DNA from: Oikopleura dioica
Lineage: Eukaryota; Animalia; Chordata
DNA: 64,000 nt
NCBI GenBank assembly: GCA_907165135.1
Contig: OU015566.1
Location: 5,766,001-5,830,000 of the forward strand
Reading direction: 5' to 3'
The translations under genes were made by a program, and so were the position numbers. Positions 37,427-51,407 of this stretch are shown one piece after another; the stretch's first letter is position 1; each line of letters begins with the position of its first letter. A model generated the notes under the pieces. The model made no database searches. It was given only the letters and a program-made list of their open reading frames with translations, and was not told where the DNA came from.

Positions 37427-40400
37427 TGAAGCTTTCAGTAGCTGTCATTTCTGCAGCTCTTGCTGCCAGAGAACCAGAGTAAGTAAAGCTCCTGAAGAGT
37501 TCGTTTTTTATATAAATTTTTCGATTAATTTTTCAAAGAAGGCACCAAGTACCTCTTATATGGGATCATAAATCTTATCTTTCCTTTAGTGCAGGTCGTC
37601 GTCTTGCAAAAATCACCGAAAAAGCCAACGAGCTCCTTGGCTACTCTGAGGACTCCAGCGCGTCGGACAGGAAAAAAGAGCAGGTCGCGAAATGGATCGG
37701 AAAAATGCTCGACTCGATGAACAAAATCGACGTTTCAGCTTGCCCCGTCCCCGGCGTCGACGAAGACCGATTCGCCGTCGACGATGACTTCAGCGAACTC
37801 TGCGAGGGATCTGGAAAACTTCCATCGATGATGCGCTCTTATGCACGAAAATTCGGCTGCGACGATGGATTCCCGAAGAAGAAATTTCTCGACAGATTCG
37901 TGAGAAAATCTCACAAGCTGAAGAACGTCATCCGAAAAGCCGGAAAATGCCCCGGCGGAGTTGTGCCAGACCCAAGCGATCCAACTGATGCTCCTGTCAC
38001 TAGTTCTCCGATCGCCAGCGCTTGTCCTGAAAACTTCTGGGCCGATTGCGACGATCTCGACAATACAGAAATCTACTTCACCAACGAGTGGACCTGCCGA
38101 AACTGCTTCCGAGTTAGAGCAACGTACGGCCAAAACACCAATTTCAATTCTTACTTCAGCGCGGCTCGAGGTAACGTGACTTCCAAAATTAGCAATATTT
38201 TATTGTAAACATTCAGGCGACTTCGTCAGCGTAAGATTTACGGAGCCCGTTGTTTGGCAAACATGGAACCATCCCGTCAGTGCTGTCACCGAAGTTGGCA
38301 ATGACAACACTTTCAAAATCGACTTCAAGCCAGATGGAAACTTCATGTCTGGCATGCTCTTCGAAGGAAATCTCCAGACTTCGGACGACGATCTTTTTGT
38401 CGACGGAAACTGGATCATCGAATCAGCCCAGCACTGTCGCTGCCGACCTGGAACAACGACAACTCCAACAACTACTCCGGACACGACTCCGGATACGACT
38501 CCGGAAACTCCGGAAACTCCACCACCATGTGTCGATCCTTGCGAAGACAGAGACAACTGTGATACTCTCGTCGATAGCTGTGAGATTCATCCAAGCGGTG
38601 GAAACGTCCTCGGCACCGTCGATGGCGACGCTATCTACACTGCATCCGTTGATGTTTTCTGCCACAAATCCAGCGGGCACGGATGGCAGAACGTCGTTCA
38701 CATGACTCGAGGAGGCAGTCGAGACCAATTCGGAGACCGATATCTTGCGATCTTCCAGCACGCCGACGGTAGTCTCAAGCTCAATGGACCAATCAAGGGG
38801 AATGCCTTCAACGAAGTTGAATACTACGTTGACTGTGATGACCAAACCTGGACCACGATCAAAATTGAGCAGAGAGAAATCGAAGGCGACTTGCTCCAGC
38901 TGACAATGTACCAAGACAGAGTTGCTCTCGGAAGCAATTTCATCAACCCACTGAGCGCTTATTCCGGCCCAATTACTGTCTACGGGTCTAACCCGTTCCA
39001 CAGCTCCGCTAGTCTTTTCAAAATTCGAAATTTCTGGCACACATCTGAGCCCTACATTGGTCCCCCTTGTGTACCTGTCGACCCCTGTGTCGGTCTTGAC
39101 AATTGCGAGACTTACATTGACAGCTGCATGATCGCTCCCTTCGCTGGAAACCAGATCGCGACGACAAATGGCTACGAGCAATTCAAAATAAGTGCGGAAG
39201 TTCGATGCACTGACCGACGCGCTCCAACGTGGGAGAATGTTTTGCATGTCAACACGGGCACTAGTCGCGAAGTTTTTGGAGATCGCTACTTCACAATTTG
39301 GAAGAAGCAAGGATCTGTCAACGAAATTCGAATCGTCGCTCCTGTTCTTGGCAATCCCAATGATGAGTTGAACGCTTACGTCAACTGCGAAGAAGGATGG
39401 CATACATTCGCTGTCCAACAAACTGCTGTCGATAGACGACAGATGAACGTTGAAATTCTCTTCGACGGAGAAGTAATCGAGAGCCAACTCGTTCGAAAGC
39501 AGGATGTTTTCAACGGCTCCTTGAATGTTGAAGTTGCTTCTGACTTTGGCTGGCCAGCTGCCACTGATCACTACGTCCGAAACTTCATCCACCAAGATTT
39601 GTCTTGCCCAGATCCTTGCTTCGGTGAAGAAAACTGCGAAACTTTCGTTGACGCTTGCGAAATTTTCCCAAGTGCTTCAAACCAGCTTTCCACAATCCAG
39701 GCTTCCGCTAATTTCAAGGCATCGATCGACATTCAGTGCAATCACAACATGGACATGGGTCGATGGTTGAACATCTTCCACATGAGCGCTGGAGGCGAAG
39801 CTGGTAACCCAGGAGATCGATTCTTTGCTGCTTGGAGACAGCCAAATGACCAGCGACTGTATTTTGCTCGAGGAGTTCCACATGGTGGATTCGCTGAGTA
39901 CAAAAACGTCGACTGTGTTGATGGAGAGTGGAACACCTACACTCTCGAACAACGACAAGATGAAGACTCTCCCGACACCGTCAGAATGACTTTCTCAATT
40001 GACGATGAAGTTGTCACAAACAACGTCTACCCGACCAGCGATGTTTTCACTGGATCCGTCGATGTCTTCTCCTCAAGAAAGTCTAACCCTGCGGATGTTG
40101 CTTCTGAATTTGCCGTACGAAATTTCTTCTACCAAACCTTCGAAGAAGTCGAGCCTCGAGTATGCGAAGATCGATCTGACCCATGCGACGGTCTCGAAGA
40201 CTGCCAAACTTTCATCGACTCTTGCATTGCCAACCCATCGGCAAGCAACAATCTCGGAAGCATCGAAACAACTGAGAACTTCAGAACCTCGATTGATATC
40301 CAATGCAATCACGGTATGGACATGGGAAGATGGCTCAACATCTTCCACATCAGCGCTGGAGGCGAAGCCGGAAGCCCAGGAGACCGATTCTTTGCTGGAT

Positions 40401-42973
40401 GGAGAAAGCCTAATGAACAGCAATTGTACTTCGCTCTCGGTGTTCCAGAAGGAGGATTTGCTCAGTACAAAACTTTTGACTGCGTCGATCAAGAATGGAA
40501 CACCTACGTTCTCGAACAGCGACAGGACTCATCTAACCCAAATATCGTCGTTTTGACTTTCTCGATTGACGGAAATGAAATCGCATCATACAGTTACGCA
40601 ACTTCTGCTGTTTTGTCCGGCACCAATGTCGATGTTTTCTCATCCAGAAAAACTGCTCTCGTTGATGTCGCATGGAACTTTGCTGTTCGAAATTTCTACC
40701 ACCAATATTTCGCCCTTGACGTTCCAGCTCCATGCACTGCTACCGATCCTTGCCAGGACGAAGACGATTGTCAGACCTTCATCAACTCCTGCGAGGCCTT
40801 CCCTGCGGCAAGCAACCAGCTTGGATCAATCAACACCAGTGTCAACTTCCGAACTTCTATCGATATTCAATGTTCCCACAGCATGGAAAACGGACGATGG
40901 CGAAATATTTTCCACATTAGCGCTGGAAATGAAGCCGGAAGCCCTGGTGATCGATTCTTTGCTGCATGGAAGAGGCCAAACAATCAGCAATTGTACTTCG
41001 CTCTCGGCGTTCCAGAAGGAGGATTTGCTCAATACCAAACGCTCGATTGCGTCGATGGCGAGTGGAACACTTACGCTCTTGAACAGCGACAGAACGAAGT
41101 CAATCCAAACATGGTCGAACTAGTCTTCACCAAAGATGACGTCGAAATCGCCTCATACAACTACGAAAGCGCCGCCGTTCTCTCCGACACAAACGTCGAT
41201 GTTTTCTTGTCCCGAAAATCACGAAATGATGATGTCGCCTGGAAATATCCAGTCCGAAACTTCTTCCATAAATCTTTTGATCTCGTCTCCCCTGCTCCAT
41301 GCACTTCAAGCGATCCTTGCGACGGTGTTGATGACTGCCAGACCTTCATCGATTCCTGCGAGAGCTTCCCTTCAGCTGGAAATCAGCTCGGATCTATCAA
41401 CACCAGCGTCAACTTCCGAACATCCATCGATATCCAGTGCAGCCACAGCATGGACAACGGCCGATGGCTGAACATCTTCCACATCAGTGCCGGAAACGAA
41501 GCAGGAAACCCCGGAGACCGATTTTTCGCTGCTTGGAAGAGGCCAAACAACCAGCAACTTTACTTTGCTCTCGGTGTTCCAGTCGGCGGTTTCGCCCAAT
41601 ACAAAACTCTTGACTGCGTTGATGGCGAATGGAACACTTACGTTCTTGAGCAGCGACAGGATAAGAGCAATCTCGACACAGTTCAAATTGTCTTCTCTAG
41701 AGATGGAGAGGAGATTGCTTCCTACACATACGATGCCGCCATTGTTCTCTCTGACACCAACGTCGATGTTTTCTCTTCCCGAAAGACGAACAACAATGAT
41801 GTTGCCTGGCTCTACCCCGTCCGAAATTTCTTCCACCAATCCTTCGATTTCTGCGAAGATCCTTGTGCTGGCGAAGAAAACTGCTCTGTCATCGTCGACT
41901 CTTGCGAAATCAATCCTTCCAAAAACAACCAAGTCGCAACCGCACCTGCTGCGTTGAACTACAAAATGTCAGCTGATGTTTTCTGCGCTGATTTGTACAC
42001 CGTAAGCAACCCGTGGATTAATATTGCCCATGTGACTGGAGGAGATGATCACAGCTCACCCGGAAGTCGAAACTTTGCGATCTGGAGACATCCAAGAGAA
42101 AACAAGCTCCACTTCCACACCAACAACCCCAACGGCAACCACAATGACCACTCTGACTACACACCGTTCGTTTGCACCCCTGGCGAGTGGAACACATTCA
42201 CCATCGAAGTTAGACAAGCTGAAGAGGCCCCATTGGCGCTCAGATACACTGTCAGCATTGACGGCGCTGAAGTGAAAACCGGACTTTACTCCTCAACAGG
42301 AGCCTTGACTTCTGGAGATCTCCAATTTTTCGTTGGGGATCCTTGGTACAACGCAGCTTCTGGCTACTTCGTTCGAAACTTCATCTACCAAACGTTTGAA
42401 GACCGAGTTGTCAGTTGCGATGATCCATGCGAAGGAGAAGAGAACTGTGTTTCCGTTGTTGATTCTTGCGGCGTCAACCCAACGAAGAACACTGAAGTTG
42501 CCACAGCGCCTGCTGCTCTCAACTACAAAATCTCAGCTGATGTGTTCTGCGCCGAATTGTACACAGTTAGCAACCCATGGATCAATGTCATTCACGTGAC
42601 TGGAGGCGATGACAGGGGCACACCCGGAAGTCGAACCTTCGCTATGTGGAGACACCCAAGACAAAATAAACTTCATTTGCATACGAATAATCCAAATGGC
42701 AACCACAACGACCACTCAGACTACACCCCATTCGTTTGCACCGCTGGCGAGTGGAATAACTTCTCCGTCGAAGTCCGTCAAGTCGAAGGCTCTCCCTCGA
42801 CCCTCAGCTACGTCGTGAGCATCGATGGAACTGAAATGAAGACTGGCACTTACTCCTCGACCGGAGCCTTGACTTCTGGCGATCTCCAGTTTTTCGTTGC
42901 TGATCCATGGTACAACTCTGCTGATGGTTACTTCGTCAAGAACGTTGTCTACCAGACATTTGAAGAGATCTAA
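37427..42973 (+). CDS. Giant secreted protein (~1800 aa) with 8 tandem ~185-aa Cys-bounded beta-rich modules (oikosin/house-protein-like)
   Basis: Signal MKLSVAVISAALA, helical N-domain (ORF 37705), a Trp-containing domain, PT linker, then 8 repeats starting xDPCxxxxxC in ORF 38345-42973. aataaa follows the stop. Confidence 0.85.
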
Positions 42974-43461
42974 GTCGCCCTGAAGAACTACCCTCTGTTT
43001 AAAAATATTTTTACTTCTTTTAAATATTTGCTTGCTAACTATATATTCTCCTTTGAATAAAACAAACTCAATCAAGAAAAAAAGTATTAAATAGTCATTT
43101 AGCATTCCTGAAAGATTTTTTTTATTCCAATGTTTATTTTATTTTATCAGGGCAGATATTGATAAAGAAAGAAAAATACTAAATGAACTCTAGAAATTAT
43201 AGGTGGTTTTGAGATTCGAGAAGGAATTTGGTATTGAAAGAAGATTCATGGTAGATTCGGAAGTGCAGTGAGAACTTTCACAATTACGGTCAATTAGGTG
43301 GTTTTTTTTTCGTTTTCGATGAAGGTTTTTTTCAATAATCGGTAGATATAAAAAAATCAAAGACGATGGCACGAGACGAAAATGGCCCTGAAGTCGTTCA
43401 GGGGTGTTATTAGGTGGTTTCAATTCGATGAAGGTTTCAAATATTTACAAAGTATAAGACT

Positions 43462-46400
43462 TTAAATGAAGAACACTTCATTCTGGAAGCGCTCCAGGAC
43501 TTGAACTCGTAGTTTGTGATCGCCGTCGATTCTTCTAAATCCGTTGGCTCTGAGCTCATGTCCGAGGGCAGTTCCTTTCCAGTGATTTCGGGCTCGCTCG
43601 GTCAGAAGATTGGCGAGGAAGACAGGCGTGGTGTGGGAGGTGCTGCAATCAACGATGAGAACGGTCAAAAATGAAAATTTAAACTTACGATTTGTTGCAT
43701 CTTTGAGTAGCCATGCTCAGCGCGTAAGTCATGTTCACCATGTTTTGGAGCTCGATGCCATTGTCGTCGTGGAGGACGCTGTAGAAGGTCGGGTTGGCGC
43801 AGCCGATAGCAGAGTGCGACATAAGATGGAAACTGTATGAGTCTACAAATGCTCTTTATTGACATTCAATCAAAAACGATCGAACCTGGCGTTCCATTTC
43901 CAAAGCCACTGACGCAAGTCCCAATTGGCACATTTTTTCCCATTCCAGTCTCGTCCTTTTTGTCAGCAGCAAAGAATTTCTGGTGGCTTGAGCGGATCGC
44001 GCAGATGAATGTGATTCCCGGCTGGTAGTCCGCTTTCAATTCGGCCAACGCCTCGCGGATTCCTTAAACAAGTCTTTAATTTCTATAAACAAAAACCAAA
44101 ATACCCATGAGCTCGTTCTTCAGAATCGCTTGGAATGCTCCTTCAGAGCCGCCTCCTCTGTAAATAATGATACGCTCTGGTAGCGCATTACTATTCCCAT
44201 CTCTGTATTTTGAGAGGAGAGCGGCCATCGCATCCTTGAGCACTCGCTTTGCAACGATGTTGAGACCTGGGTGCTGGACATCGACGTAGTTTTTGTAGCC
44301 AAGAGCTCCTTGTGCCGTGCTTGCCACAAAACCAGCGATCGTGGGGTCGGCTGAATCTTTCTCCGCATGGCTCAATCCGTAGCCCATGACCATTAATGGC
44401 ACAGGGCTTTCGGGAAGAGGGATTTGGATTTTCCAATTGTGACCGCCCAACTTCTTGTTGATCTAGAACTCAGAGTTGAAATATTAAAAGCGGTGTTTTC
44501 GTTTACCTTGTACCAAATATTCCTGAGTGATATTCGATTGTTCTCCATGACAGTTATGGGGAGAATGCATTGCGTCATCACCGAGTGATTGAGCTCCGCC
44601 GCGACTTTGACAAGACTGTAGTCATCCTTGTTGCGTCCACAGCAGACCAAAATGAATGCCAAGTTGGCCCAGGCTTTAGGATCCGCCTTTTTCATTCTGG
44701 CGCACCAGCCGTCAAAATCAAGCCCAGTTTCAAACCATTCTGAAAAAAGCGGCGCGCCCATCGGTACTCCTAGCTCAGTTCCGATTTTGCAGAGATGTTG
44801 TCCAGCCTCGTTCCAGTAGCGTCCAAACTCATTTTGATTTTCGCCAATGACGACGCGCATCCAGTTGCGATTGACCGGAGCAGCGGGTTGCTCGAACTGA
44901 GAAATATTCCAGCTGTTATCGTCGTTTGGCTTGACGTCGATTTCTTCTCCTTGATTCGCGAAAATCTTTGGCGTGACAAGAACGTGGCCTTCAGCTTCCA
45001 TCACCGTTTTTGAGAGTCGAAGTCCGTATGTCTCCAAAACTTGTCGGTCGAAGAGCTCCTTGTTTTCAACAATCTCTTGGATTTTAGCTTGTCGATCTGG
45101 AGCTGGCTCGGCTGTCGCACGGATGAAATCAGCTTGAGTTTTTTCGCTGATGAGACCTTTCGGTCTTTGTCCGCCTAGAAGACGGACATTTTCAAGGGGG
45201 AATTTCACGACTTGATTTCCTTTCGGCGCTTTTTTGTGCTTTGCCGTGGTTTCTACGACGACGTACTGGCCGTTGAGATGATTGAATCCGGCGCGGCGGA
45301 AGTGATCGTACATATTTTTGACACACTCGTTGCGTGAATCGTACATCTCAGTATGCGCAATCGGATATCTGGAGAATTTGGAGAATTTGTAGTATTGTCG
45401 ATCGCCTCCTATGACTTCGATGTCAAGATGCTTCAAGCTCTCTTCAAGCAGATGATGTCGCCCTTCGTATTCCTCAAACAGATCGGTCATCAGACTTTGA
45501 CGAAACATAAGAGCGTGCGCCAAGTCCAAATTCAGAGTAAGAGCATTCTTGCCAATCGACTTCCAGTGACTGATCTTAGCACTTTGGCAGATACCATGCC
45601 ATACTGTTTTGCCTCCTGGGATGTTTCGCTTGTCACTGTCGGTGTTGACAATGTCGCAGAAGGCTGCGCGGCCTTTTGAGAGATACCTGAAGATTTTTTA
45701 AGTTCAAATCAATTCTTAGATCTTTATGAATGTGTTTCAAATCAGGTATTATTATCTAACTTACTGTGCTCTTGCGGCTGGAAGAGTTCGCATAATGATT
45801 TCAACTGCTTGAATGACATCTGAAGGCGGGACATCAACGTTAAGCCCATTGATATAATCACTGACAGTAGATAAGCTTATACCAAGTCGAAAGAGAAATT
45901 TGCCCTCCACATGATCTTTCTTTCCATTTTCTCGCGGGACATCAGCGAGTCCGAACTCAAATTCGTTCCTTCGCTTGTCTTCCTGGACCCAGCCGACATC
46001 TTCAACTCGAAAAAGTCCGATTCCACGGAACTCTTTGTAGAGCAGCATGCAGCTTTCGCCGTCAAAAGCAATCGGTGCGCCGAGCATTCGTCCGAGTTTT
46101 GCGATGACGGTCCTTCTTTCCTTTTTCTTGAGCTCAGGTGGGCGGCCCTTCGAGGCTTTGACGGTGCAGCTTAGAAGCTCGTAGACGTAGAAACGAGAGC
46201 TTGGATTGATTTCGATACGGTAGGCATTTGTTTTCAGAGGAATTTTGCGACCTTCTGAAAGGGAGCCATTCATCTTCGCAATTGGAAGGTCCTCAAGTTC
46301 CTTTGATCTCTCGCGAACTGTAAATTAAATTTTAACAGCTAAGAACAACATAAAAAGTGACTTACTTTCTTGCTTTTCTCTTCGCTCCTCGTGATTGGCA

Positions 46401-48360
46401 GTGTCGCGAACGATATCCGCCTGGATTTTGAGTCGATCATGCGCACGAGCTACTTCGGCTTTGTAGCTGAGCAGCTGGTCCTCGCCCTGGTAATGCATTC
46501 GGGCGATCTTCTCCTTCGTCTCTTGCCGTTTTTCATCCTTAAAAAGTTTCTATTTTTAAAGAATCAAGGATTTCTCCATCAACCAGAGCCTAATGTTCAA
46601 ATAAACATTTGACTTTACCTTCTAAAATGCTCAGAAAAGTCTGTTTTTTTACTAACAACCCTTGCAAACCCGATTTCGGGAAAAAGTGAAATCGGGAGAC
46701 TTTAACGGAGTGCATCCACTTTATTATTTATCATTTATGGTCCCTTATATAGATATTCGAAATATCAATACGGATACCCAGGATAGTCGGAATTTAGGTT
46801 CCCGGAATTTTTTTTGAAATCATCTTTGTCTTGATAGTGAATTCACTTAAAATAACTGTGAGCGAGCGCGAGTGAGCGCAAGCAGGGACCTAGGAATTTT
46901 CTGGTGAGTGAGCGAGCGCGAGCAGAGGTTCTCGAAATTATGATGAGTGAGTGAGCATGAGCGCTCGCTCACTCGCTCGCGCTCGCTCGTGGCTCGCGCT
47001 CACTACTTTTTCAAACACTGATTTTGAGGTGAAGGCCAGCTCAGCTCAGCTCAGCTCACTTTGACCTCAGCTCAGCCAGCTCAGCTCAATGGTTCTTCGA
47101 AAAGAGCCAGCTCAGCTCAGCTAGCTCAATTTTAACCTCAGCTCTGCTAGCTCAGCTCAGCTAATTGAGCTCACAAAGATCAAACTATTTTTGATTGGTC
47201 TTTTTTTCAAAAACTTCGACGTATTTTCTATTCATGCTTTCCTGTTGGTCAATAAAAATAATACGAGTTTTCTTTGAGGAAAGAGAGAAATTAAATGAAT
47301 AAGGGCTTTCAATGTAAAAATAATAAAGTACAGATGGTAAATATGTGAGAGACTGGTCTAGGGGTGTGCAAGGGCAGGGACTCCCTGTCCGTCTACGCTA
47401 GAAGGTGGAAACATCGGCTCACCCACATAAATATAATGTGTATGTAACCACTGTATAATATTTCGGAGGATTCCTTATGGACCATAAGTTATGGTTAAAT
47501 GACAGAATAAATTTTTTTATGTCAAAAAAGTGCGATGTTGCTTGTGAGATGCTGGTCTAGGGGTGTGTGAAGGCAGAGGGTCCCTGTCCATCTCCTCAAG
47601 AAGGTTGAAATTCGCTTCAACACATTTTTTGGCATATTTTCTTAGTAAATAAAAATCATCAAATCATCAAAGTTTTTCAAAAAGTCTTCAACATCAAAGT
47701 TGTTCAGCTTGAGCTGCTCTATCATCCTATCATGACAGATTTTGAAAAAAACAGCGATTTGAGAAGGCCGCTTTTTGCGACTGGGCCCTACTCATAGCAA
47801 AATCCTGGTGTCTTCGCTCGCGCTCGCTCGCTCACGAAAAAATCAAGAGGGTCTGCTCGGGCTCGCTCACTCATGTTAAAATTCTGAGAGCCTCTGCTCG
47901 CGTTTACTCGCTCACGAGAGTTTTGACCATTATTTCAAACACTGATCATTACAGTTCTGAAATACGCTACCGATCAAGACTTAATTTAAGATGAATTATC
48001 AAAACAAGCGCCGGGCCATTTTCGATTCCAAAATACATACTGTAAATATGATATAGAGCTTGCTTATTGTTTATCTAAAAGCAGATGATCTCTGGCACAA
48101 TGCCAGAAAAAGGCTACATAAGATAGCAGACTGAGTCTGTTTTAAATGGAGGGAATTTTAAAAGACGATAAAGCCAAAATCAATGAGTGCATTACCCTTT
48201 CGTTTCTTGGGCCACCGCCTCGGCCACGACCTCGTCCTCTGCCACCGCCGCGTCCTCCTCGGTGATACTGCCCGCCATCTCTCGACTGCGACCGGCTTCG
48301 ATCGTGGTAGTCGCGTTGGTGGTGTCGCCCTTCTCGCTCTCTGCGGCCGTATCCACTCAT
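43462..48360 (-). CDS. Divergent Argonaute/PIWI-family protein lacking the slicer tetrad
   Basis: RG-rich exon 1 (MSGYGRR..RGRGRGRGGG), N domain (GRKIPLKTNAYRI), L1 (VWHGICQS..LNLD), PAZ (VKFPLENV), MID (YSLVK..TQC..YKINKKLGG) and PIWI (GYGLSH, IIYRGGGSEG, PVFLANLLTERAR), ending VFFI*. Confidence 0.92.
46855..47944. repeat. Repeat cluster inside the 1.66-kb Argonaute intron
   Basis: GAGC/GCTC-rich blocks are inverted between 46855-46960 and 47810-47920; tttcaaacactg ends at 47009-47020 and 47933-47944; CAGCT array at 47036-47172; ~65-bp direct repeats at ~47348-47412 and ~47547-47612. Confidence 0.75.
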
Positions 48361-50492
48361 GTCCCGGGAATCGCTCACTAAAAATAAAATTATTGGAAAA
48401 ATGAACTTTACATCCGTCAAGGCGAGCTAATTGTGAGACAGAAAGCGTTTTTAGAATCTTTTACAATTTGGGAAGTTTTTCCCTATTTTAACCAGGTTGA
48501 TTTAGGAACTTTATTTTGTCTTTTTTGTGTTTACTTGTTCCGTTCTATCAACCCTGGTTGTTTTGTTAATTAACGCTTTTTATTCTCACTAGCCCGATAT
48601 TTAGTTCTTTTTTTCTCCCAGTAAGCTACTTTTCTCGTAACTTACCAGTTGGGCTCGCAGCCTTCCAGTTTCGCGATCTTCAAAAATTGAAACACAACAA
48701 CTTCAATTTGAAGACGCGGAAGTGGGAGTCCAAACTGATTTGTTTAAAAATTCAGTAGCGCTCCGTGGGGCCCCCTCTGTCGCCCGAAAACGAGCTCTAT
48801 TGACAATTGTTCGCGGGCCTGTGGCGAGGAGCAAACGAATACGTGGATGATTCGGGCGAAAAATCGATCCCTATTGGCCTTTTCAGTGGGTGGGGGTGAT
48901 AAGGTCAAGTTGATCTGGTGCGGTAGGGCCTGTACTAAGCTCTACCGCGACCACACTTACTGCTGATCACACGGTATGTAATGCTCGACAGTTTCATTTG
49001 ATCTGTGTGGTAATAAAGAATGCTTTGTAGCTGTGATTATTGAGCTTTGAATCGATCAGCTTAAAACATTTCCTTTTTAAACCGCTTTACGTTATCGTAA
49101 ATTGGCGCCGGGCTGGCGCCATAAAATCCGGGATTCCCTCTAATGCTCGTTCTACGCACCGACACCATTTGAAATGTCAGCGCGTCAAGGCAATTTACGT
49201 GCTAATTGAGCTCTGCGAAGATTACCTTGAGAAGGATCACGAAACCAATTTCCAGCAAAAAGTTTCATTTTATAAAAAATGACAGCTCTATGTTTTCGCT
49301 TCGGACAAATGTAGAACTTTGATTCTGGTTCAAATAGAGAATGGAAAAAATAAGGGTGGCTCTCCTTTATATACGGAAGGAAGCTAATTAAAATGGCAGG
49401 GAAATGAGCTTTGGGAGCTCCCTGATGCAATCGACCCGGAGCTCGGTCGATCAACGGATCACTGTATGTTCTTACTGTATTCTTGAAAAAAAGAACAAAG
49501 TTTTTTTCGGGCTTTGAGGTTTTAAAACGCTTTCTCTTGATTATTTACCTGTTCCTGAAGAGATTCTCGATCGTAACTACCGTATGCAAAAAGCGAAACT
49601 TGAAAAGGTTCTCTTATACTTTGTTAAAAGTGCTGATGAAAATCCCCCACGTCGTCGTTTTTATAGGGCGGGGACGAACGCTCACCACAAGAGGTCCGCC
49701 AACGAAGTGAGTTGTAGTTTTCCGAAAGTCACGTTGATGCGGATGCGCTCGTCAGGTGCGGTAGCTTAACATCCGCTGCTGATACGCACAACGCTCCTGA
49801 TTAGCGTTTTCTCAAGTCCCCTGATCGCTAACTTTTTAGTCTTGGAATCAAACAAAAACTTATTTATTTCCTGCTTTTCTGCGTTAGATTTGTCTTTGAA
49901 AGAAAGAATGAGTTTTATTGAAGAAAATATTTGTTTTATACTGCAAATGCATTAGCCTAAAAGGGCTTTTCTTGAATAATAGATGATAAAATCCGCGGTA
50001 ATGCGCTTAAAAGCCATTAGCAATATGCCAGATCTGCTTCGCAGGATTCAAGATATGGTTTCAGTTATTACTGTATCATCTAAAAGAGACTGTAACTGGG
50101 AATCGATAACTGACGGAAATAGAGTGCTTGACCCCTATCGCAAACTAACTTAGCTTACTGGGAGAAAAAAAGAATGCTTGCACTAGTTGGCTTTGTTGTA
50201 CTAGCCAGAACTCAGGCCGGCGTTCGCTGATACGCACTAGCCTCACTATTTCCTGATGCGAAAGCGCACTAGATTTTTAAATGTCACGTAATGGCTCCAA
50301 ATCGTTTTCTCTCTCCGGAAGCATTAATCGAACCCGCCATCAAATATTGAAAAATTGAAAGAATTGTATTGTCAGGAATTCAGCACACAATTTGCTTTCA
50401 AAAGAAGGAGGTAAGAAGGAAAATGTACAGTTATAAACTTGGTTTTGGCTTTGCTTTTTCTTTTTGTTTCGTGAAGTAGGCTTCTCCGACCG

Positions 50493-51407
50493 TTACATCT
50501 CGGTCATGATTTGTAGAAATTGAAACTCGGGTTTTCTTCGTTTGTTGTAGCGTTTTACACTTACCCGCGGGTAGTTTATGTGACCAAAGGTCAGGTATTT
50601 GCTAAAATAAACCATGAGAATAAGTGGATAAATACGGTGATGGATAAAAGCAAGCCTACTCCATGAATGAAGTCATACTTAGTGTAGACATTTCTGTAAA
50701 GGTCTTTTTTAGTTTCAAGGTCGATTTCAAGCATCCACTCCGTTGTCCTGTCTGTTTCTTTTTTCAAGTCGATCCGGCGGGTTTTCTCGTTGATTCCAAG
50801 ATAGAGTCCGTGCTGCTCGCCCTGGATGGTGACCACCACATTTCCATCGCGAAAATCAATTGGAGTGACCTTGATGTTTGCTAGAAAAGAGGGTTAGAAA
50901 AGGGCGAAGAGGGAAGAGATGATGGGATACTGTTCAGGGTAAATGGATCCAGGTCTACGTCGACTTTGCCAGGTTGAATTCTGAGAACGGCCATCATGTG
51001 ATTGTTGAGGATTTTTTGTCCGACGGGGCCATAGAGATTGCTAAAAGATATAAGATCAAGTATACTTCTGACAGTCTTTATTATCTTTTGAATAAGCAAA
51101 AAACTGGACGTATACATATTTTGTTCGGAGAAGGAGTGGTTTATATTACTGTGTTTATAATTATATGCGAAATGGTAAACCATTATAAAATTATATAAAT
51201 ATTAATAGGAGGAAATTCTCCATTGTTGATTTCAATGATTTATGAGCTTCAATTATTTTCATGAAGATAAATTATAAAAAATTATAAATTTAAAGCTGGT
51301 TATGGTTCTCAAATGAAAACTTACCTGTAATTGAGAGTGATGAAACTGTCTATCTCCGGAAGATTCTTTCGCCTTGAAATCCTGTTGTTTTCGTCCCTCG
51401 TCAAAAG
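50493..51407 (-). CDS. Divergent fibroblast growth factor family protein (start unresolved)
   Basis: Spliced core NLYGPVG..LRIQPGKVDVDLDP..NIKVTPIDFRDGNVVVTIQGEQHGLYLGINEK..YRNVYTNKYLTFG..EFQFL matches the FGF beta-trefoil pattern (V.I.G...GLYL.MN.KG; YN.Y.S..Y.A). Confidence 0.65.

What the first reader, a model, noticed from the sequence alone, without database searches (positions are those of the whole stretch)
43462..48360. Highly divergent, slicer-dead Argonaute with an intact guide-binding pocket
The catalytic positions read G (GYGLSH for GADVTH), G (YRGG for YRDG) and N (FLANL for YYAHL). The MID 5'-phosphate residues (YxxxK, TQC, KINxKLGG) and the hydrophobic C-terminus are kept. The N-terminus has RG repeats plus a charged helical exon. 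Non-slicing, fast-evolving Argonautes recall the nematode WAGO class and suggest a lineage-specific small-RNA pathway. dsDNA-triggered silencing (DNAi) has been reported in O. dioica, so a role there is a testable speculation.
Basis: partly seen in the sequence, partly recalled or inferred. Interest (0 to 1): 0.75.

Follow-up and report, generated by a model that had tools for sequence, protein, structure and literature searches.

The report
Slicer-dead larvacean Argonaute family member
This is an intact eight-exon gene for a divergent Argonaute that has lost all four RNA-cutting residues but keeps its guide-binding pocket. It belongs to a previously uncharacterised larvacean-specific family in a genome where most Argonaute genes are likewise "blunt" and RNA-dependent RNA polymerase genes are present.

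Summary
On the minus strand, 48360..43462 holds an eight-exon, all GT-AG gene of 983 codons with ArgoN, L1, PAZ (shown by fold), MID and Piwi domains. The catalytic DEDH positions read G, N, G and N. The MID 5'-phosphate residues (YSLVK, TQC, K|INKKLGG, R of ERAR) and the hydrophobic C-terminus are kept.

It is neither a pseudogene nor an ordinary AGO or PIWI orthologue. It belongs to a strongly monophyletic family (100/100) with three paralogues in this genome and relatives in larvacean transcripts and marine metagenomes. Every member has lost the tetrad and carries an RG/RGG N-terminus.

The family profile matches human AGO2 far better than PIWI proteins (385 against about 150 bits). A syntenic orthologue is about 63% identical, against 81-95% and 85% for two other genes. 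pN is 0.25 and pS 0.81, which fits fast evolution under constraint.

Eight of the twelve Argonaute loci here lack catalytic residues, and three RdRP loci keep DLDGD. The WAGO comparison holds as an analogy, not as membership. Expression of this gene, its guides and any DNAi role remain untested. The scan noted another slicer-dead Argonaute elsewhere in this genome (s1-346168).

The parts
48196..48360 (-). Exon 1: ATG at 48360, 55 codons, arginine/glycine-rich. RG tract at 48211-48261. Ends in phase 0 before a GTAATG donor.
   Evidence: The start MSGYGR matches the N-termini of family proteins P0128 and P0131. The orthologue L046 has the same RG-rich exon just upstream of its exon 2.
48378..48379 (-). 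Candidate trans-splice acceptor: AG after a T-rich tract, 17 nt upstream of the ATG. Inferred only.
   Evidence: Sequence. A family transcript, L031, begins with the 3' part of the spliced leader.
46550..48195 (-). Intron 1, 1646 nt, filled with dispersed short repeats (about 46817-47020 and 47021-47250, plus GAGCGAGC-type arms at 46860-46990 and 47814-47920).
   Evidence: dozens of copies at 80-94% identity across the genome. The partial RNA read matches fall only here. The orthologue has a short intron 1.
46366..46549 (-). Exon 2: highly charged, family-specific N-terminal extension (29 of 61 residues are D/E/K/R).
   Evidence: tblastn of P0113 and P0125 starts here. 45% identical to the orthologue.
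45765..46317 (-). Exon 3: Argonaute N domain.
   Evidence: Pfam ArgoN, E 6.2e-08, 33.6 bits, above the cut-off.
44507..45686 (-). Exon 4: L1, PAZ, L2 and MID. Holds the 5'-phosphate residues YSLVK (44606-44620), TQC (44567-44575) and the K566 equivalent (44507-44509).
   Evidence: Aligned to human AGO2 residues 191-563. AlphaFold model with mean pLDDT 87.5. The top 47 Foldseek hits are all AGO-clade, E about 1e-22, over about 408 alignment columns.
44105..44462 (-). Exon 5: first half of the PIWI domain, starting INKKLGG. Catalytic positions read G (44376-44378, for D597), N (44259-44261, for E637) and G (44154-44156, for D669).
   Evidence: Pfam Piwi, E 4.3e-22. Alignments. Coordinates.
43886..44062 (-). 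Exon 6: PIWI domain, continued.
   Evidence: Pfam Piwi, E 1e-09. 79% identical to the orthologue.
43689..43842 (-). Exon 7: PIWI domain, with the family-invariant NPTFY..LHDDN block.
   Evidence: Pfam Piwi, E 7.5e-06. Alignment. 86% identical to the orthologue.
43462..43642 (-). Exon 8: end of the PIWI domain. N at the H807 position (43609-43611), R812 equivalent kept (43594-43596), C-terminus ...EVFFI, stop TAA at 43464-43462.

Best explanation
The locus encodes a functional, non-slicing, AGO-clade Argonaute of 983 residues. It belongs to a larvacean-specific family whose common ancestor had already lost the DEDH catalytic tetrad and had gained an N-terminal RG/RGG-rich, charged extension.

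Shown:
- The gene is intact and has the full N-L1-PAZ-L2-MID-PIWI architecture.
- All four catalytic residues are lost.
- The residues that anchor a guide's 5' monophosphate are retained.
- It is under purifying selection but evolves fast.
- The family is monophyletic, and relatives are expressed as spliced-leader trans-spliced mRNAs.

Inferred:
- It loads a 5'-phosphorylated small RNA guide and recognises complementary targets.
- Because it cannot cut, it silences or marks targets by recruiting partners, most plausibly through the disordered RG/RGG N-terminus. Such regions are methyl-arginine/Tudor-type or RNA-binding interaction surfaces in other Argonautes.
- It acts in a lineage-specific small-RNA pathway, beside the canonical AGO pair and the single PIWI of this genome.
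For: Gene model: 8 exons, all GT-AG, in frame, 2952 nt.

Domains: Pfam ArgoN, ArgoL1 and Piwi. The exon 4 model has pLDDT 87.5 and matches human AGO1-4 over its whole length.

Catalytic and pocket residues: read against AGO2 and family alignments.

AGO clade: the family profile scores 385 bits against human AGO2 residues 33-819, 267 bits against plant AGO10, and about 100-150 bits against PIWI-clade structures.

Family: only 100 proteins among 1.84 billion match exon 4 at E<=1e-3. The best are metagenome or transcript proteins at 56-58% and about 40% identity, followed by arthropod, priapulid and tardigrade 'argonaute-2-like' proteins at about 25%. In the careful ML tree the family is monophyletic at 100/100 with a stem of 1.21.

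All family members read S or G, then G or S, then S or N at D597, D669 and H807.

Constraint: the syntenic orthologue on metagenome contig L046 has the same exon structure. pN is 0.25 and pS 0.81 (saturated). Identity is 45-86% by exon, against 81-95% for the adjacent FGF-like gene and 85% for an M28 peptidase.

Expression of the family: P0113 sits on a 3655-nt contig with an uninterrupted 989-codon ORF. The contig begins with a 21-mer that occurs 53 times in this genome (0 in the control), consistent with the spliced leader.
Against: No read from three oligo-dT RNA-seq runs and one single-cell run lay on any exon at 88% likeness or more. I could not tell whether those runs come from the same cryptic lineage, so this is inconclusive, but it leaves expression of this gene unshown.

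Pfam does not detect a PAZ domain in this protein. Several PAZ 3'-end pocket positions look changed by eye, so 3'-end anchoring may differ.

Exon 5 alone scores better against PIWI-clade structures (45 bits) than against AGO2 (28.5 bits), which I cannot explain.

The guide type, the partners and the role of the RG tract are all inference.
Confidence: 0.7

Rival explanations
1. It is the effector arm of an RdRP-amplified, WAGO-like secondary siRNA pathway. It would be loaded with RdRP products, possibly 5'-triphosphorylated, and would mediate the dsDNA-triggered silencing (DNAi) reported in this species.
For: 8 of 12 Argonaute loci lack catalytic residues. Three RdRP (PF05183) loci have E values of 2e-87 to 2e-52, and two of them show DLDGDEYF. 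DNAi is documented in O. dioica (PMC5345011). In the tree the family lies in the same loosely supported assemblage as nematode WAGO-like/CSR-1 rows and insect Ago2.
Against: There are no small-RNA data. The family does not pair with the nematode rows, and the assemblage (90/86) gathers the long branches, so attraction is possible. In Branchiostoma, animal RdRPs did not appear to produce siRNAs (PMC6396948). Co-occurrence of genes is not a pathway.
Confidence: 0.18
2. It is a guide-independent or regulatory Argonaute: a decoy, scaffold or RNA-binding protein that uses its RGG region and no longer works through loaded small RNAs.
For: The tetrad is gone, PAZ is not recognisable to Pfam, and the L1-MID part is only about 20% identical to AGO2. 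RGG regions bind RNA on their own (general knowledge).
Against: Y529, K533, Q545, K566, K570 and R812 equivalents are conserved, as is the buried hydrophobic C-terminus, across a family whose other positions have diverged to 35-60% identity. That is hard to explain without 5'-phosphate binding.
Confidence: 0.07
3. It is a decaying paralogue (pseudogene in the making) left over from an Argonaute expansion.
For: Catalytic residues are lost, evolution is fast, no exonic RNA reads were seen, and intron 1 is swollen by repeats.
Against: There are 983 uninterrupted codons over 8 exons with canonical splice sites. The same structure and open frames exist in a deeply diverged orthologue whose synonymous sites are saturated (pS 0.81) while pN is 0.25. 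The family-invariant blocks are retained.
Confidence: 0.03
4. It is a PIWI-clade derivative that works with Tudor proteins through its N-terminal RG repeats in a piRNA-like germline pathway.
For: N-terminal RG repeats are typical of PIWI proteins (general knowledge). Exon 5 scores higher against sponge, silkworm and mouse PIWI structures than against AGO2. The ending ...FFI is hydrophobic, like PIWI tails.
Against: The whole-family profile gives 385 bits to AGO2 and about 150 bits to PIWI. ArgoN, L1 and L2 Pfam hits occur in this gene and its relatives. The exon 4 fold ranks 47 AGO-clade chains ahead of Siwi. The genome has a separate bona fide PIWI with DDH and the QYAHKLA motif at C5:12.81 Mb.
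Confidence: 0.02

Closest known systems
Human AGO1-4 / canonical metazoan AGO clade (PDB 4ola, 6mdz, 4kxt and others)
   Same: N-L1-PAZ-L2-MID-PIWI architecture. The family profile aligns over AGO2 residues 33-819 at 385 bits. The 5'-phosphate pocket residues, the RCxxSxS...ERAR block and the hydrophobic C-terminus are shared.
   Different: All four DEDH residues are replaced. Identity in L1-MID is only about 20%. There is an added RG-rich and charged N-terminal extension. The genome has its own canonical AGO pair (C5:9.44-9.45 Mb), which groups elsewhere in the tree.
Nematode WAGO (worm-specific Argonaute) clade
   Same: Catalytic residues lost, lineage-specific multi-copy expansion, fast evolution, and RdRP genes in the same genome.
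   Different: No specific grouping with the nematode rows (Heterodera, Meloidogyne, Aphelenchoides, CSR-1) in the tree. Guide chemistry is unknown. This is a chordate lineage, so any likeness would be convergent.
Arthropod siRNA-class Argonaute-2
   Same: These are the nearest named sequence neighbours of exon 4 and of the family, at about 25-27% identity. They are fast-evolving, have low-complexity N-terminal repeats (general knowledge), and lie in the same loose assemblage in the tree.
   Different: The arthropod proteins in my set all keep GADVTH, YRDG and the YAH motif and are slicers. The grouping has weak support.
PIWI-clade Argonautes (Siwi, EfPiwi, MILI/MIWI)
   Same: N-terminal RG repeats. 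Local similarity in exon 5, including KLGG..W, IAGFVAS and IIxYR.G.
   Different: Much weaker overall profile match. AGO-type N and L1 domains. A distinct true PIWI exists in the genome.
Protist Argonautes with RGG N-termini (Trypanosoma brucei AGO1, Toxoplasma Ago). Recalled from memory, not tested.
   Same: An RGG-rich N-terminus on an AGO. In Toxoplasma, arginine methylation is reported to recruit a Tudor nuclease that supplies cleavage.
   Different: No sequence relationship was tested here. This is offered only as a lead for how a blunt AGO with an RG tract could still destroy targets.

Membership tests
Eukaryotic Argonaute, AGO clade | Argonaute N domain and linker L1 | tested here: met
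   Pfam ArgoN scores 33.6 bits against a cut-off of 30.9 on exon 3. ArgoL1 scores 21.5 against 22 (just under) on exon 4. Relatives carry ArgoN, L1 and L2 hits. The exon 4 model aligns over L1 of AGO2.
Eukaryotic Argonaute, AGO clade | PAZ domain | tested here: met
   Pfam gives no PAZ hit on this protein. However, phmmer aligns exon 4 across AGO2 residues 191-563. The AlphaFold model (pLDDT 87.5) matches AGO1-4 over about 408 columns, E 1e-22. PAZ is detected by Pfam in relatives P0126, P0128 and P0131. The integrity of the 3'-end pocket was not assessed.
Eukaryotic Argonaute, AGO clade | MID domain with a 5'-phosphate pocket (Y529, K533, Q545, K566, K570, R812 of AGO2) | tested here: met
   YSLVK, TQC, K|INKKLGG and ERAR align to these positions and are conserved in the family.
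Eukaryotic Argonaute, AGO clade | PIWI (RNase H-like) domain | tested here: met
   Pfam Piwi on exons 5, 6 and 7 at 79, 38 and 26 bits.
Eukaryotic Argonaute, AGO clade | Closer to AGO than to PIWI proteins | tested here: met
   The family profile gives 385 bits to AGO2, 267 to AGO10 and 150 or less to PIWI structures. The fold search ranks AGO chains first. Caveat: exon 5 alone prefers PIWI, and no full-length PIWI set could be put in the tree.
Slicer-competent Argonaute | DEDH catalytic tetrad | tested here: not met
   G, N, G and N at D597, E637, D669 and H807. The orthologue reads S, H, S and N. Most of the family reads S, N, G and S.
Canonical miRNA-class AGO orthologue | Groups with the conserved metazoan AGO1-4 type | tested here: not met
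   The canonical type in this genome is the tandem pair at C5:9.44-9.45 Mb, which reads GADVTH and PAPAYYAHLVAFRARYHL. It groups with priapulid and centipede rows, apart from the family.
Nematode WAGO clade | Monophyly with nematode worm-specific Argonautes | tested here: inconclusive
   The nematode rows and the family lie in one 90/86 assemblage of long branches but are not sisters. The deep forks are open.
Nematode WAGO clade | Loading with RdRP-made 5'-triphosphate 22G RNAs | not testable with these tools
   There are no small-RNA data. RdRP genes are present, but that is only context.
PIWI clade | PIWI-type sequence signature (for example QYAHKLA) and overall profile | tested here: not met
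   This gene reads VFLANLLTERAR. The true PIWI at C5:12.81 Mb reads PAPCQYAHKLA with DDH.

The most novel reading that the evidence does not exclude
Larvacean tunicates, which are chordates, have independently built a nematode-like system. It would consist of a radiation of non-slicing Argonautes (this RG-tailed family and at least five further blunt paralogues) fed by cellular RdRPs that keep their catalytic motif. This system would be the machinery behind the unexplained dsDNA-triggered gene silencing (DNAi) of Oikopleura, in a way that recalls fungal quelling.
Probability: 0.18. Interest if true: 0.85.

Novelty: new variant of a known kind. Interest (0 to 1): 0.6.

Why it matters
Vertebrates and most deuterostomes are described as having a few conserved AGOs plus PIWIs and no RdRP-driven amplification. 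This compact chordate genome carries twelve Argonaute loci. Eight of them have lost catalytic residues, including a conserved, expressed family with RG-rich tails, and three RdRP loci sit alongside them.

That gives concrete candidate genes for a lineage-specific small-RNA pathway and for the unknown mechanism of DNAi, which is the standard knock-down tool in this model organism. It also offers an independent case for asking why Argonaute radiations so often discard slicing.

If the gene turns out to be an unexpressed or redundant paralogue, the finding reduces to one more divergent Argonaute.

Tried and rejected
1. RNA evidence. One run search and one read-laying run on 43300-48600 used three oligo-dT runs and one single-cell run at 88% likeness or more. 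There were no exonic reads, only partial matches to intron 1 repeats. This is inconclusive: synonymous sites between cryptic lineages are saturated, so reads from another lineage would not map. I had no second call to calibrate on a housekeeping gene.

2. PIWI references for the tree. I used an alignment query that combined P0113, a nematode protein and PIWI exons of this genome. It returned nematode WAGO-like/CSR-1 proteins but no animal PIWI, so the only PIWI-clade row in the tree is one exon of this genome's own PIWI. The AGO-versus-PIWI call therefore rests on profile and fold comparisons.

3. A closer, named orthologue. The search with exon 4 (216-688 aa length window) found only three metagenome proteins at 56-58% identity. 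No protein encoded by the window itself turned up in the databases searched. The only NCBI O. dioica protein found (P0130) is the orthologue of a paralogue, L039.

4. dN/dS. Synonymous sites are saturated, so only pN and pS are reported.

5. Single origin of all divergent Argonautes of this genome. The AU test gave p 0.041, which is borderline, and the group was chosen after I had seen the tree. I draw no conclusion from it.

6. Literature. Searches for Oikopleura, larvacean or appendicularian with Argonaute, Dicer, WAGO, slicer or RdRP found only Henriet et al. 2015 (PMC4402516). That paper states that several Oikopleura proteins fall in the Ago subfamily and one in Piwi. Its supplement is not held.

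7. The joined 983-residue model. Every search used single exons by reference, and the window's row in the tree is exon 4 alone.

Full report
**Observation**

The finding's coordinates are the exact ends of a coding sequence on the minus strand. Three-frame translation and inspection of the junctions give eight exons:
- 48360-48196
- 46549-46366
- 46317-45765
- 45686-44507
- 44462-44105
- 44062-43886
- 43842-43689
- 43642-43462

All introns are GT-AG. Six of them are 42-78 nt and one is 1646 nt. The exons join in frame to 2952 nt, which is 983 codons plus TAA.

Pfam run exon by exon finds ArgoN on exon 3 (above its cut-off), ArgoL1 on exon 4 (0.5 bit below its cut-off) and Piwi on exons 5-7.

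- G for D597 (GYGLSH)
- G for D669 (YRGGGSEG)
- N for H807 (VFLANL)
- retained Y529/K533 (YSLVK), Q545 (TQC), K566/K570 (K|INKKLGG, split by intron 4) and R812 (ERAR)
- a hydrophobic C-terminus (EVFFI)

The glutamate finger E637 is also lost. It reads N in PGLNIV. The whole DEDH tetrad is therefore gone.

Exon 1 is arginine/glycine-rich (16 R and 16 G in 55 residues). Exon 2 is 48% charged.

**Is it a real gene?**

The long intron 1 raised doubt about exon 1, but three lines support it:
- Its start, MSGYGR, matches the N-termini of related proteins.
- The orthologous contig L046 has the same RG-rich exon immediately upstream of exon 2.
- Intron 1 is long only because it is packed with dispersed 200-230 nt repeats that have dozens of copies in the genome.

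L046 is a 16.5 kb JGI marine-metagenome contig. It carries the same gene with the same exon pattern, next to the same FGF-like neighbour. That neighbour lies at window 50672-50997 on the minus strand and is 81-95% identical.

Across 823 aligned codons the two Argonautes are about 63% identical, ranging from 45% in exon 2 to 86% in exon 7. pN is 0.25 and pS is 0.81, so synonymous sites are saturated. Both copies are open throughout.

An M28 peptidase on the same contig is 85% identical to its best match in this genome.

On these two comparisons the gene is constrained but evolves clearly faster than its neighbours. This argues against a pseudogene.

**Family**

HMMER read all 1.84 billion representative proteins with exon 4 as the query. 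Only 100 scored E<=1e-3. The best hits are unnamed metagenome or run-assembly proteins at 58% and about 40% identity. After those come 'argonaute-2-like' proteins of scorpions, ticks, centipedes, priapulids, tardigrades and insects at about 25%.

One of the 40% group, P0113, is 989 residues long. It sits on a 3655-nt contig with no introns. The first 21 bases of that contig occur 53 times in this genome and 0 times in the reversed control. This fits the 3' end of the Oikopleura spliced leader (the leader sequence itself is from memory). The contig is therefore a trans-spliced mRNA from a larvacean.

Searching with P0113 brought in seven further relatives at 41-72% identity. The score then drops sharply to ordinary AGOs at 27%.

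All members share four features:
- a long RG/RGG N-terminus
- the charged segment
- invariant blocks (ISHWK, NALTLN, NPTFYQVLHDDN, RCEKSISE.APVRLASLRAERA)
- the ending FF[IL]

All of them have lost the tetrad. They typically read S, N, G and S. The syntenic orthologue reads S, H, S and N. The variation among small residues at these sites shows that they are no longer under catalytic constraint.

Within this genome the family has three loci: this gene, C5:11.87 Mb and C2:11.26 Mb. The single NCBI O. dioica protein recovered (P0130, 'unnamed protein product') is the counterpart of the C5 locus at 69% identity, not of this gene.

**Clade**

A profile of seven family proteins scores as follows:
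- 385 bits (E 7e-114) against human AGO2 over residues 33-819
- 267 bits against Arabidopsis AGO10
- about 100-150 bits against PIWI-clade structures

An AlphaFold model of exon 4, built with a 41-row alignment, has mean pLDDT 87.5. Its 47 best Foldseek matches are all AGO1-4 or AGO10, over about 408 columns. Siwi follows after them. This also shows a PAZ fold that Pfam missed.

I built a careful ML tree on the exon 4 region (56 rows, 389 columns, LG+C20). The rows were single exons of this genome's paralogues and database proteins. The tree gives these results:
- The family is monophyletic at 100/100 on a long stem (1.21).
- It has three sub-clades: this gene with its orthologues, the two other paralogues with P0130, and a set with no member in this genome.
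- It lies apart from the canonical AGO pair of this genome.
- It falls inside a 90/86 assemblage of long-branched sequences: insect Ago2, nematode WAGO-like and CSR-1, mite, tardigrade, and the other divergent paralogues here. Long-branch attraction cannot be excluded there.
- It is not sister to the nematode rows.

Holding all divergent paralogues of this genome together with the family is borderline rejected (AU p 0.041).

One oddity remains. Exon 5 on its own matches PIWI-clade structures better than AGO2 (45 against 28.5 bits).

**Genomic context**

A Pfam Piwi scan of the whole assembly finds twelve loci. I read the three catalytic columns (D597, D669, H807) on an HMM alignment.

Loci that keep the catalytic residues:
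- the tandem canonical pair at C5:9.44-9.45 Mb (D597 and H807 read; D669 was not read cleanly, because the codon spans an intron)
- one AGO at C4:12.24 Mb (D/D/H)
- the single PIWI at C5:12.81 Mb (D/D/H)

Loci that have lost them:

| Locus | Residues at D597 / D669 / H807 |
|---|---|
| This gene | G/G/N |
| C5:11.87 Mb | S/G/S |
| C2:11.26 Mb | S/G/S |
| C4:10.26 Mb | S/N/E |
| C2:8.46 Mb | S/D/K |
| C1:8.85 Mb | D?/P/Q |
| C2:9.88 Mb | ?/T/S |
| C5:14.63 Mb | L/P/K |

The genome also has three loci matching eukaryotic RdRP (PF05183, E 2e-87 to 2e-52). Two of them show the DLDGDEYF catalytic motif. Two further loci match Dicer_dimer.

Another first-stage note in this scan (s1-346168) flagged a slicer-dead Argonaute elsewhere in the genome. 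That agrees with this picture.

**Mechanism**

Shown: this is a complete Argonaute scaffold with an intact 5'-phosphate pocket and no catalytic tetrad. It is conserved under purifying selection in a family that is expressed in at least one relative.

Inferred: it binds a 5'-phosphorylated small RNA guide, pairs with targets, and acts without cutting. It would do so by recruiting other factors, with the RG/RGG tail as the likeliest docking or RNA-binding surface.

Untested: whether the guides are Dicer products, RdRP products or something else, and whether the pathway is the one triggered by dsDNA (DNAi, PMC5345011).

**Literature**

In the library available, Henriet et al. 2015 (PMC4402516) report one Piwi and 'several' Ago-subfamily proteins in Oikopleura. 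The text I could read does not comment on catalytic residues. I found nothing on a slicer-dead Argonaute radiation or on RdRPs in larvaceans.

**Limits**

- Expression of this gene was not shown.
- The PIWI clade is represented in the tree by one exon only.
- The deep branching order is unresolved.

**Verdict**

The gene is a genuine, constrained, non-slicing AGO-clade Argonaute of a larvacean-specific family. The WAGO parallel is a reasonable analogy, strengthened by the genome-wide pattern and the RdRP genes, but it is not a demonstrated relationship or pathway.

Noticed in passing
Own genome G000: C4:10.26 Mb (L038), C2:8.46 Mb (L041), C1:8.85 Mb (L032), C2:9.88 Mb (L033), C5:14.63 Mb (L040), C5:11.87 Mb (L039), C2:11.26 Mb (L042), plus this gene: Eight of the twelve Piwi-domain loci in the assembly lack one or more of the D/D/H catalytic residues. 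Only the tandem canonical AGO pair (C5:9.44-9.45 Mb), one AGO at C4:12.24 Mb and the single PIWI (C5:12.81 Mb) keep them. L032, L033 and L040 form a second clade specific to this genome (99/98).
   Followed up: partly
G000:C1:11201149-11202963 (L047), C2:7457815-7459549 (L048), C2:320849-322571: Three loci match the eukaryotic RNA-dependent RNA polymerase family PF05183 (E 2e-87, 1e-57, 2e-52). L047 and L048 show the DLDGDEYF catalytic motif. They lie on chromosome-scale contigs and contain introns.
   Followed up: partly
G000:C2:6656899-6657132 (L049), C1:13630138-13630326 (L050): Two loci match the Dicer dimerisation domain, which suggests two Dicer-like genes.
   Followed up: no
window 46817-47250 and 47800-47920 (intron 1 of the gene): There are two adjacent dispersed repeat families of about 200 and 230 nt, with dozens of copies at 80-94% identity across all large contigs, flanked by GAGCGAGC-type inverted arms. 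RNA reads from other loci match them partially. They account for the unusually long intron.
   Followed up: partly
window 44106-44462 (exon 5): This exon alone scores higher against PIWI-clade structures (EfPiwi, Siwi, MILI; up to 45 bits) than against human AGO2 (28.5 bits), although the family as a whole is clearly AGO-like. I have no explanation.
   Followed up: partly
window 50672-50997, minus strand: The upstream neighbour is a small FGF-like gene (weak Pfam FGF hit, E 0.007, on the L046 copy). It is 81-95% identical between this genome and metagenome contig L046 and marks the only conserved synteny around the Argonaute.
   Followed up: partly
window 38345-42973, plus strand: This is a single 1542-codon open frame made of about eight tandem Cys-containing modules of about 185 residues. 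It has a weak 3-keto-disaccharide-hydrolase (concanavalin-like) Pfam hit and runs convergent with the Argonaute's 3' end.
   Followed up: no
G000, 53 sites, for example C1:8116674 and 8117211, C4:8484321 and 8484791: The 21-mer CCGATTTCGATTGTCTAACAG, taken to be the 3' end of the spliced leader, occurs 53 times, often as closely spaced inverted pairs. This is consistent with multi-copy SL RNA genes.
   Followed up: no
L046 (JGI metagenome 3300009436 contig) compared with the window: Synonymous sites between this genome and the metagenome larvacean are saturated (pS 0.57-0.81), and only two adjacent genes are syntenic. This fits deeply diverged cryptic lineages with scrambled gene order.
   Followed up: partly
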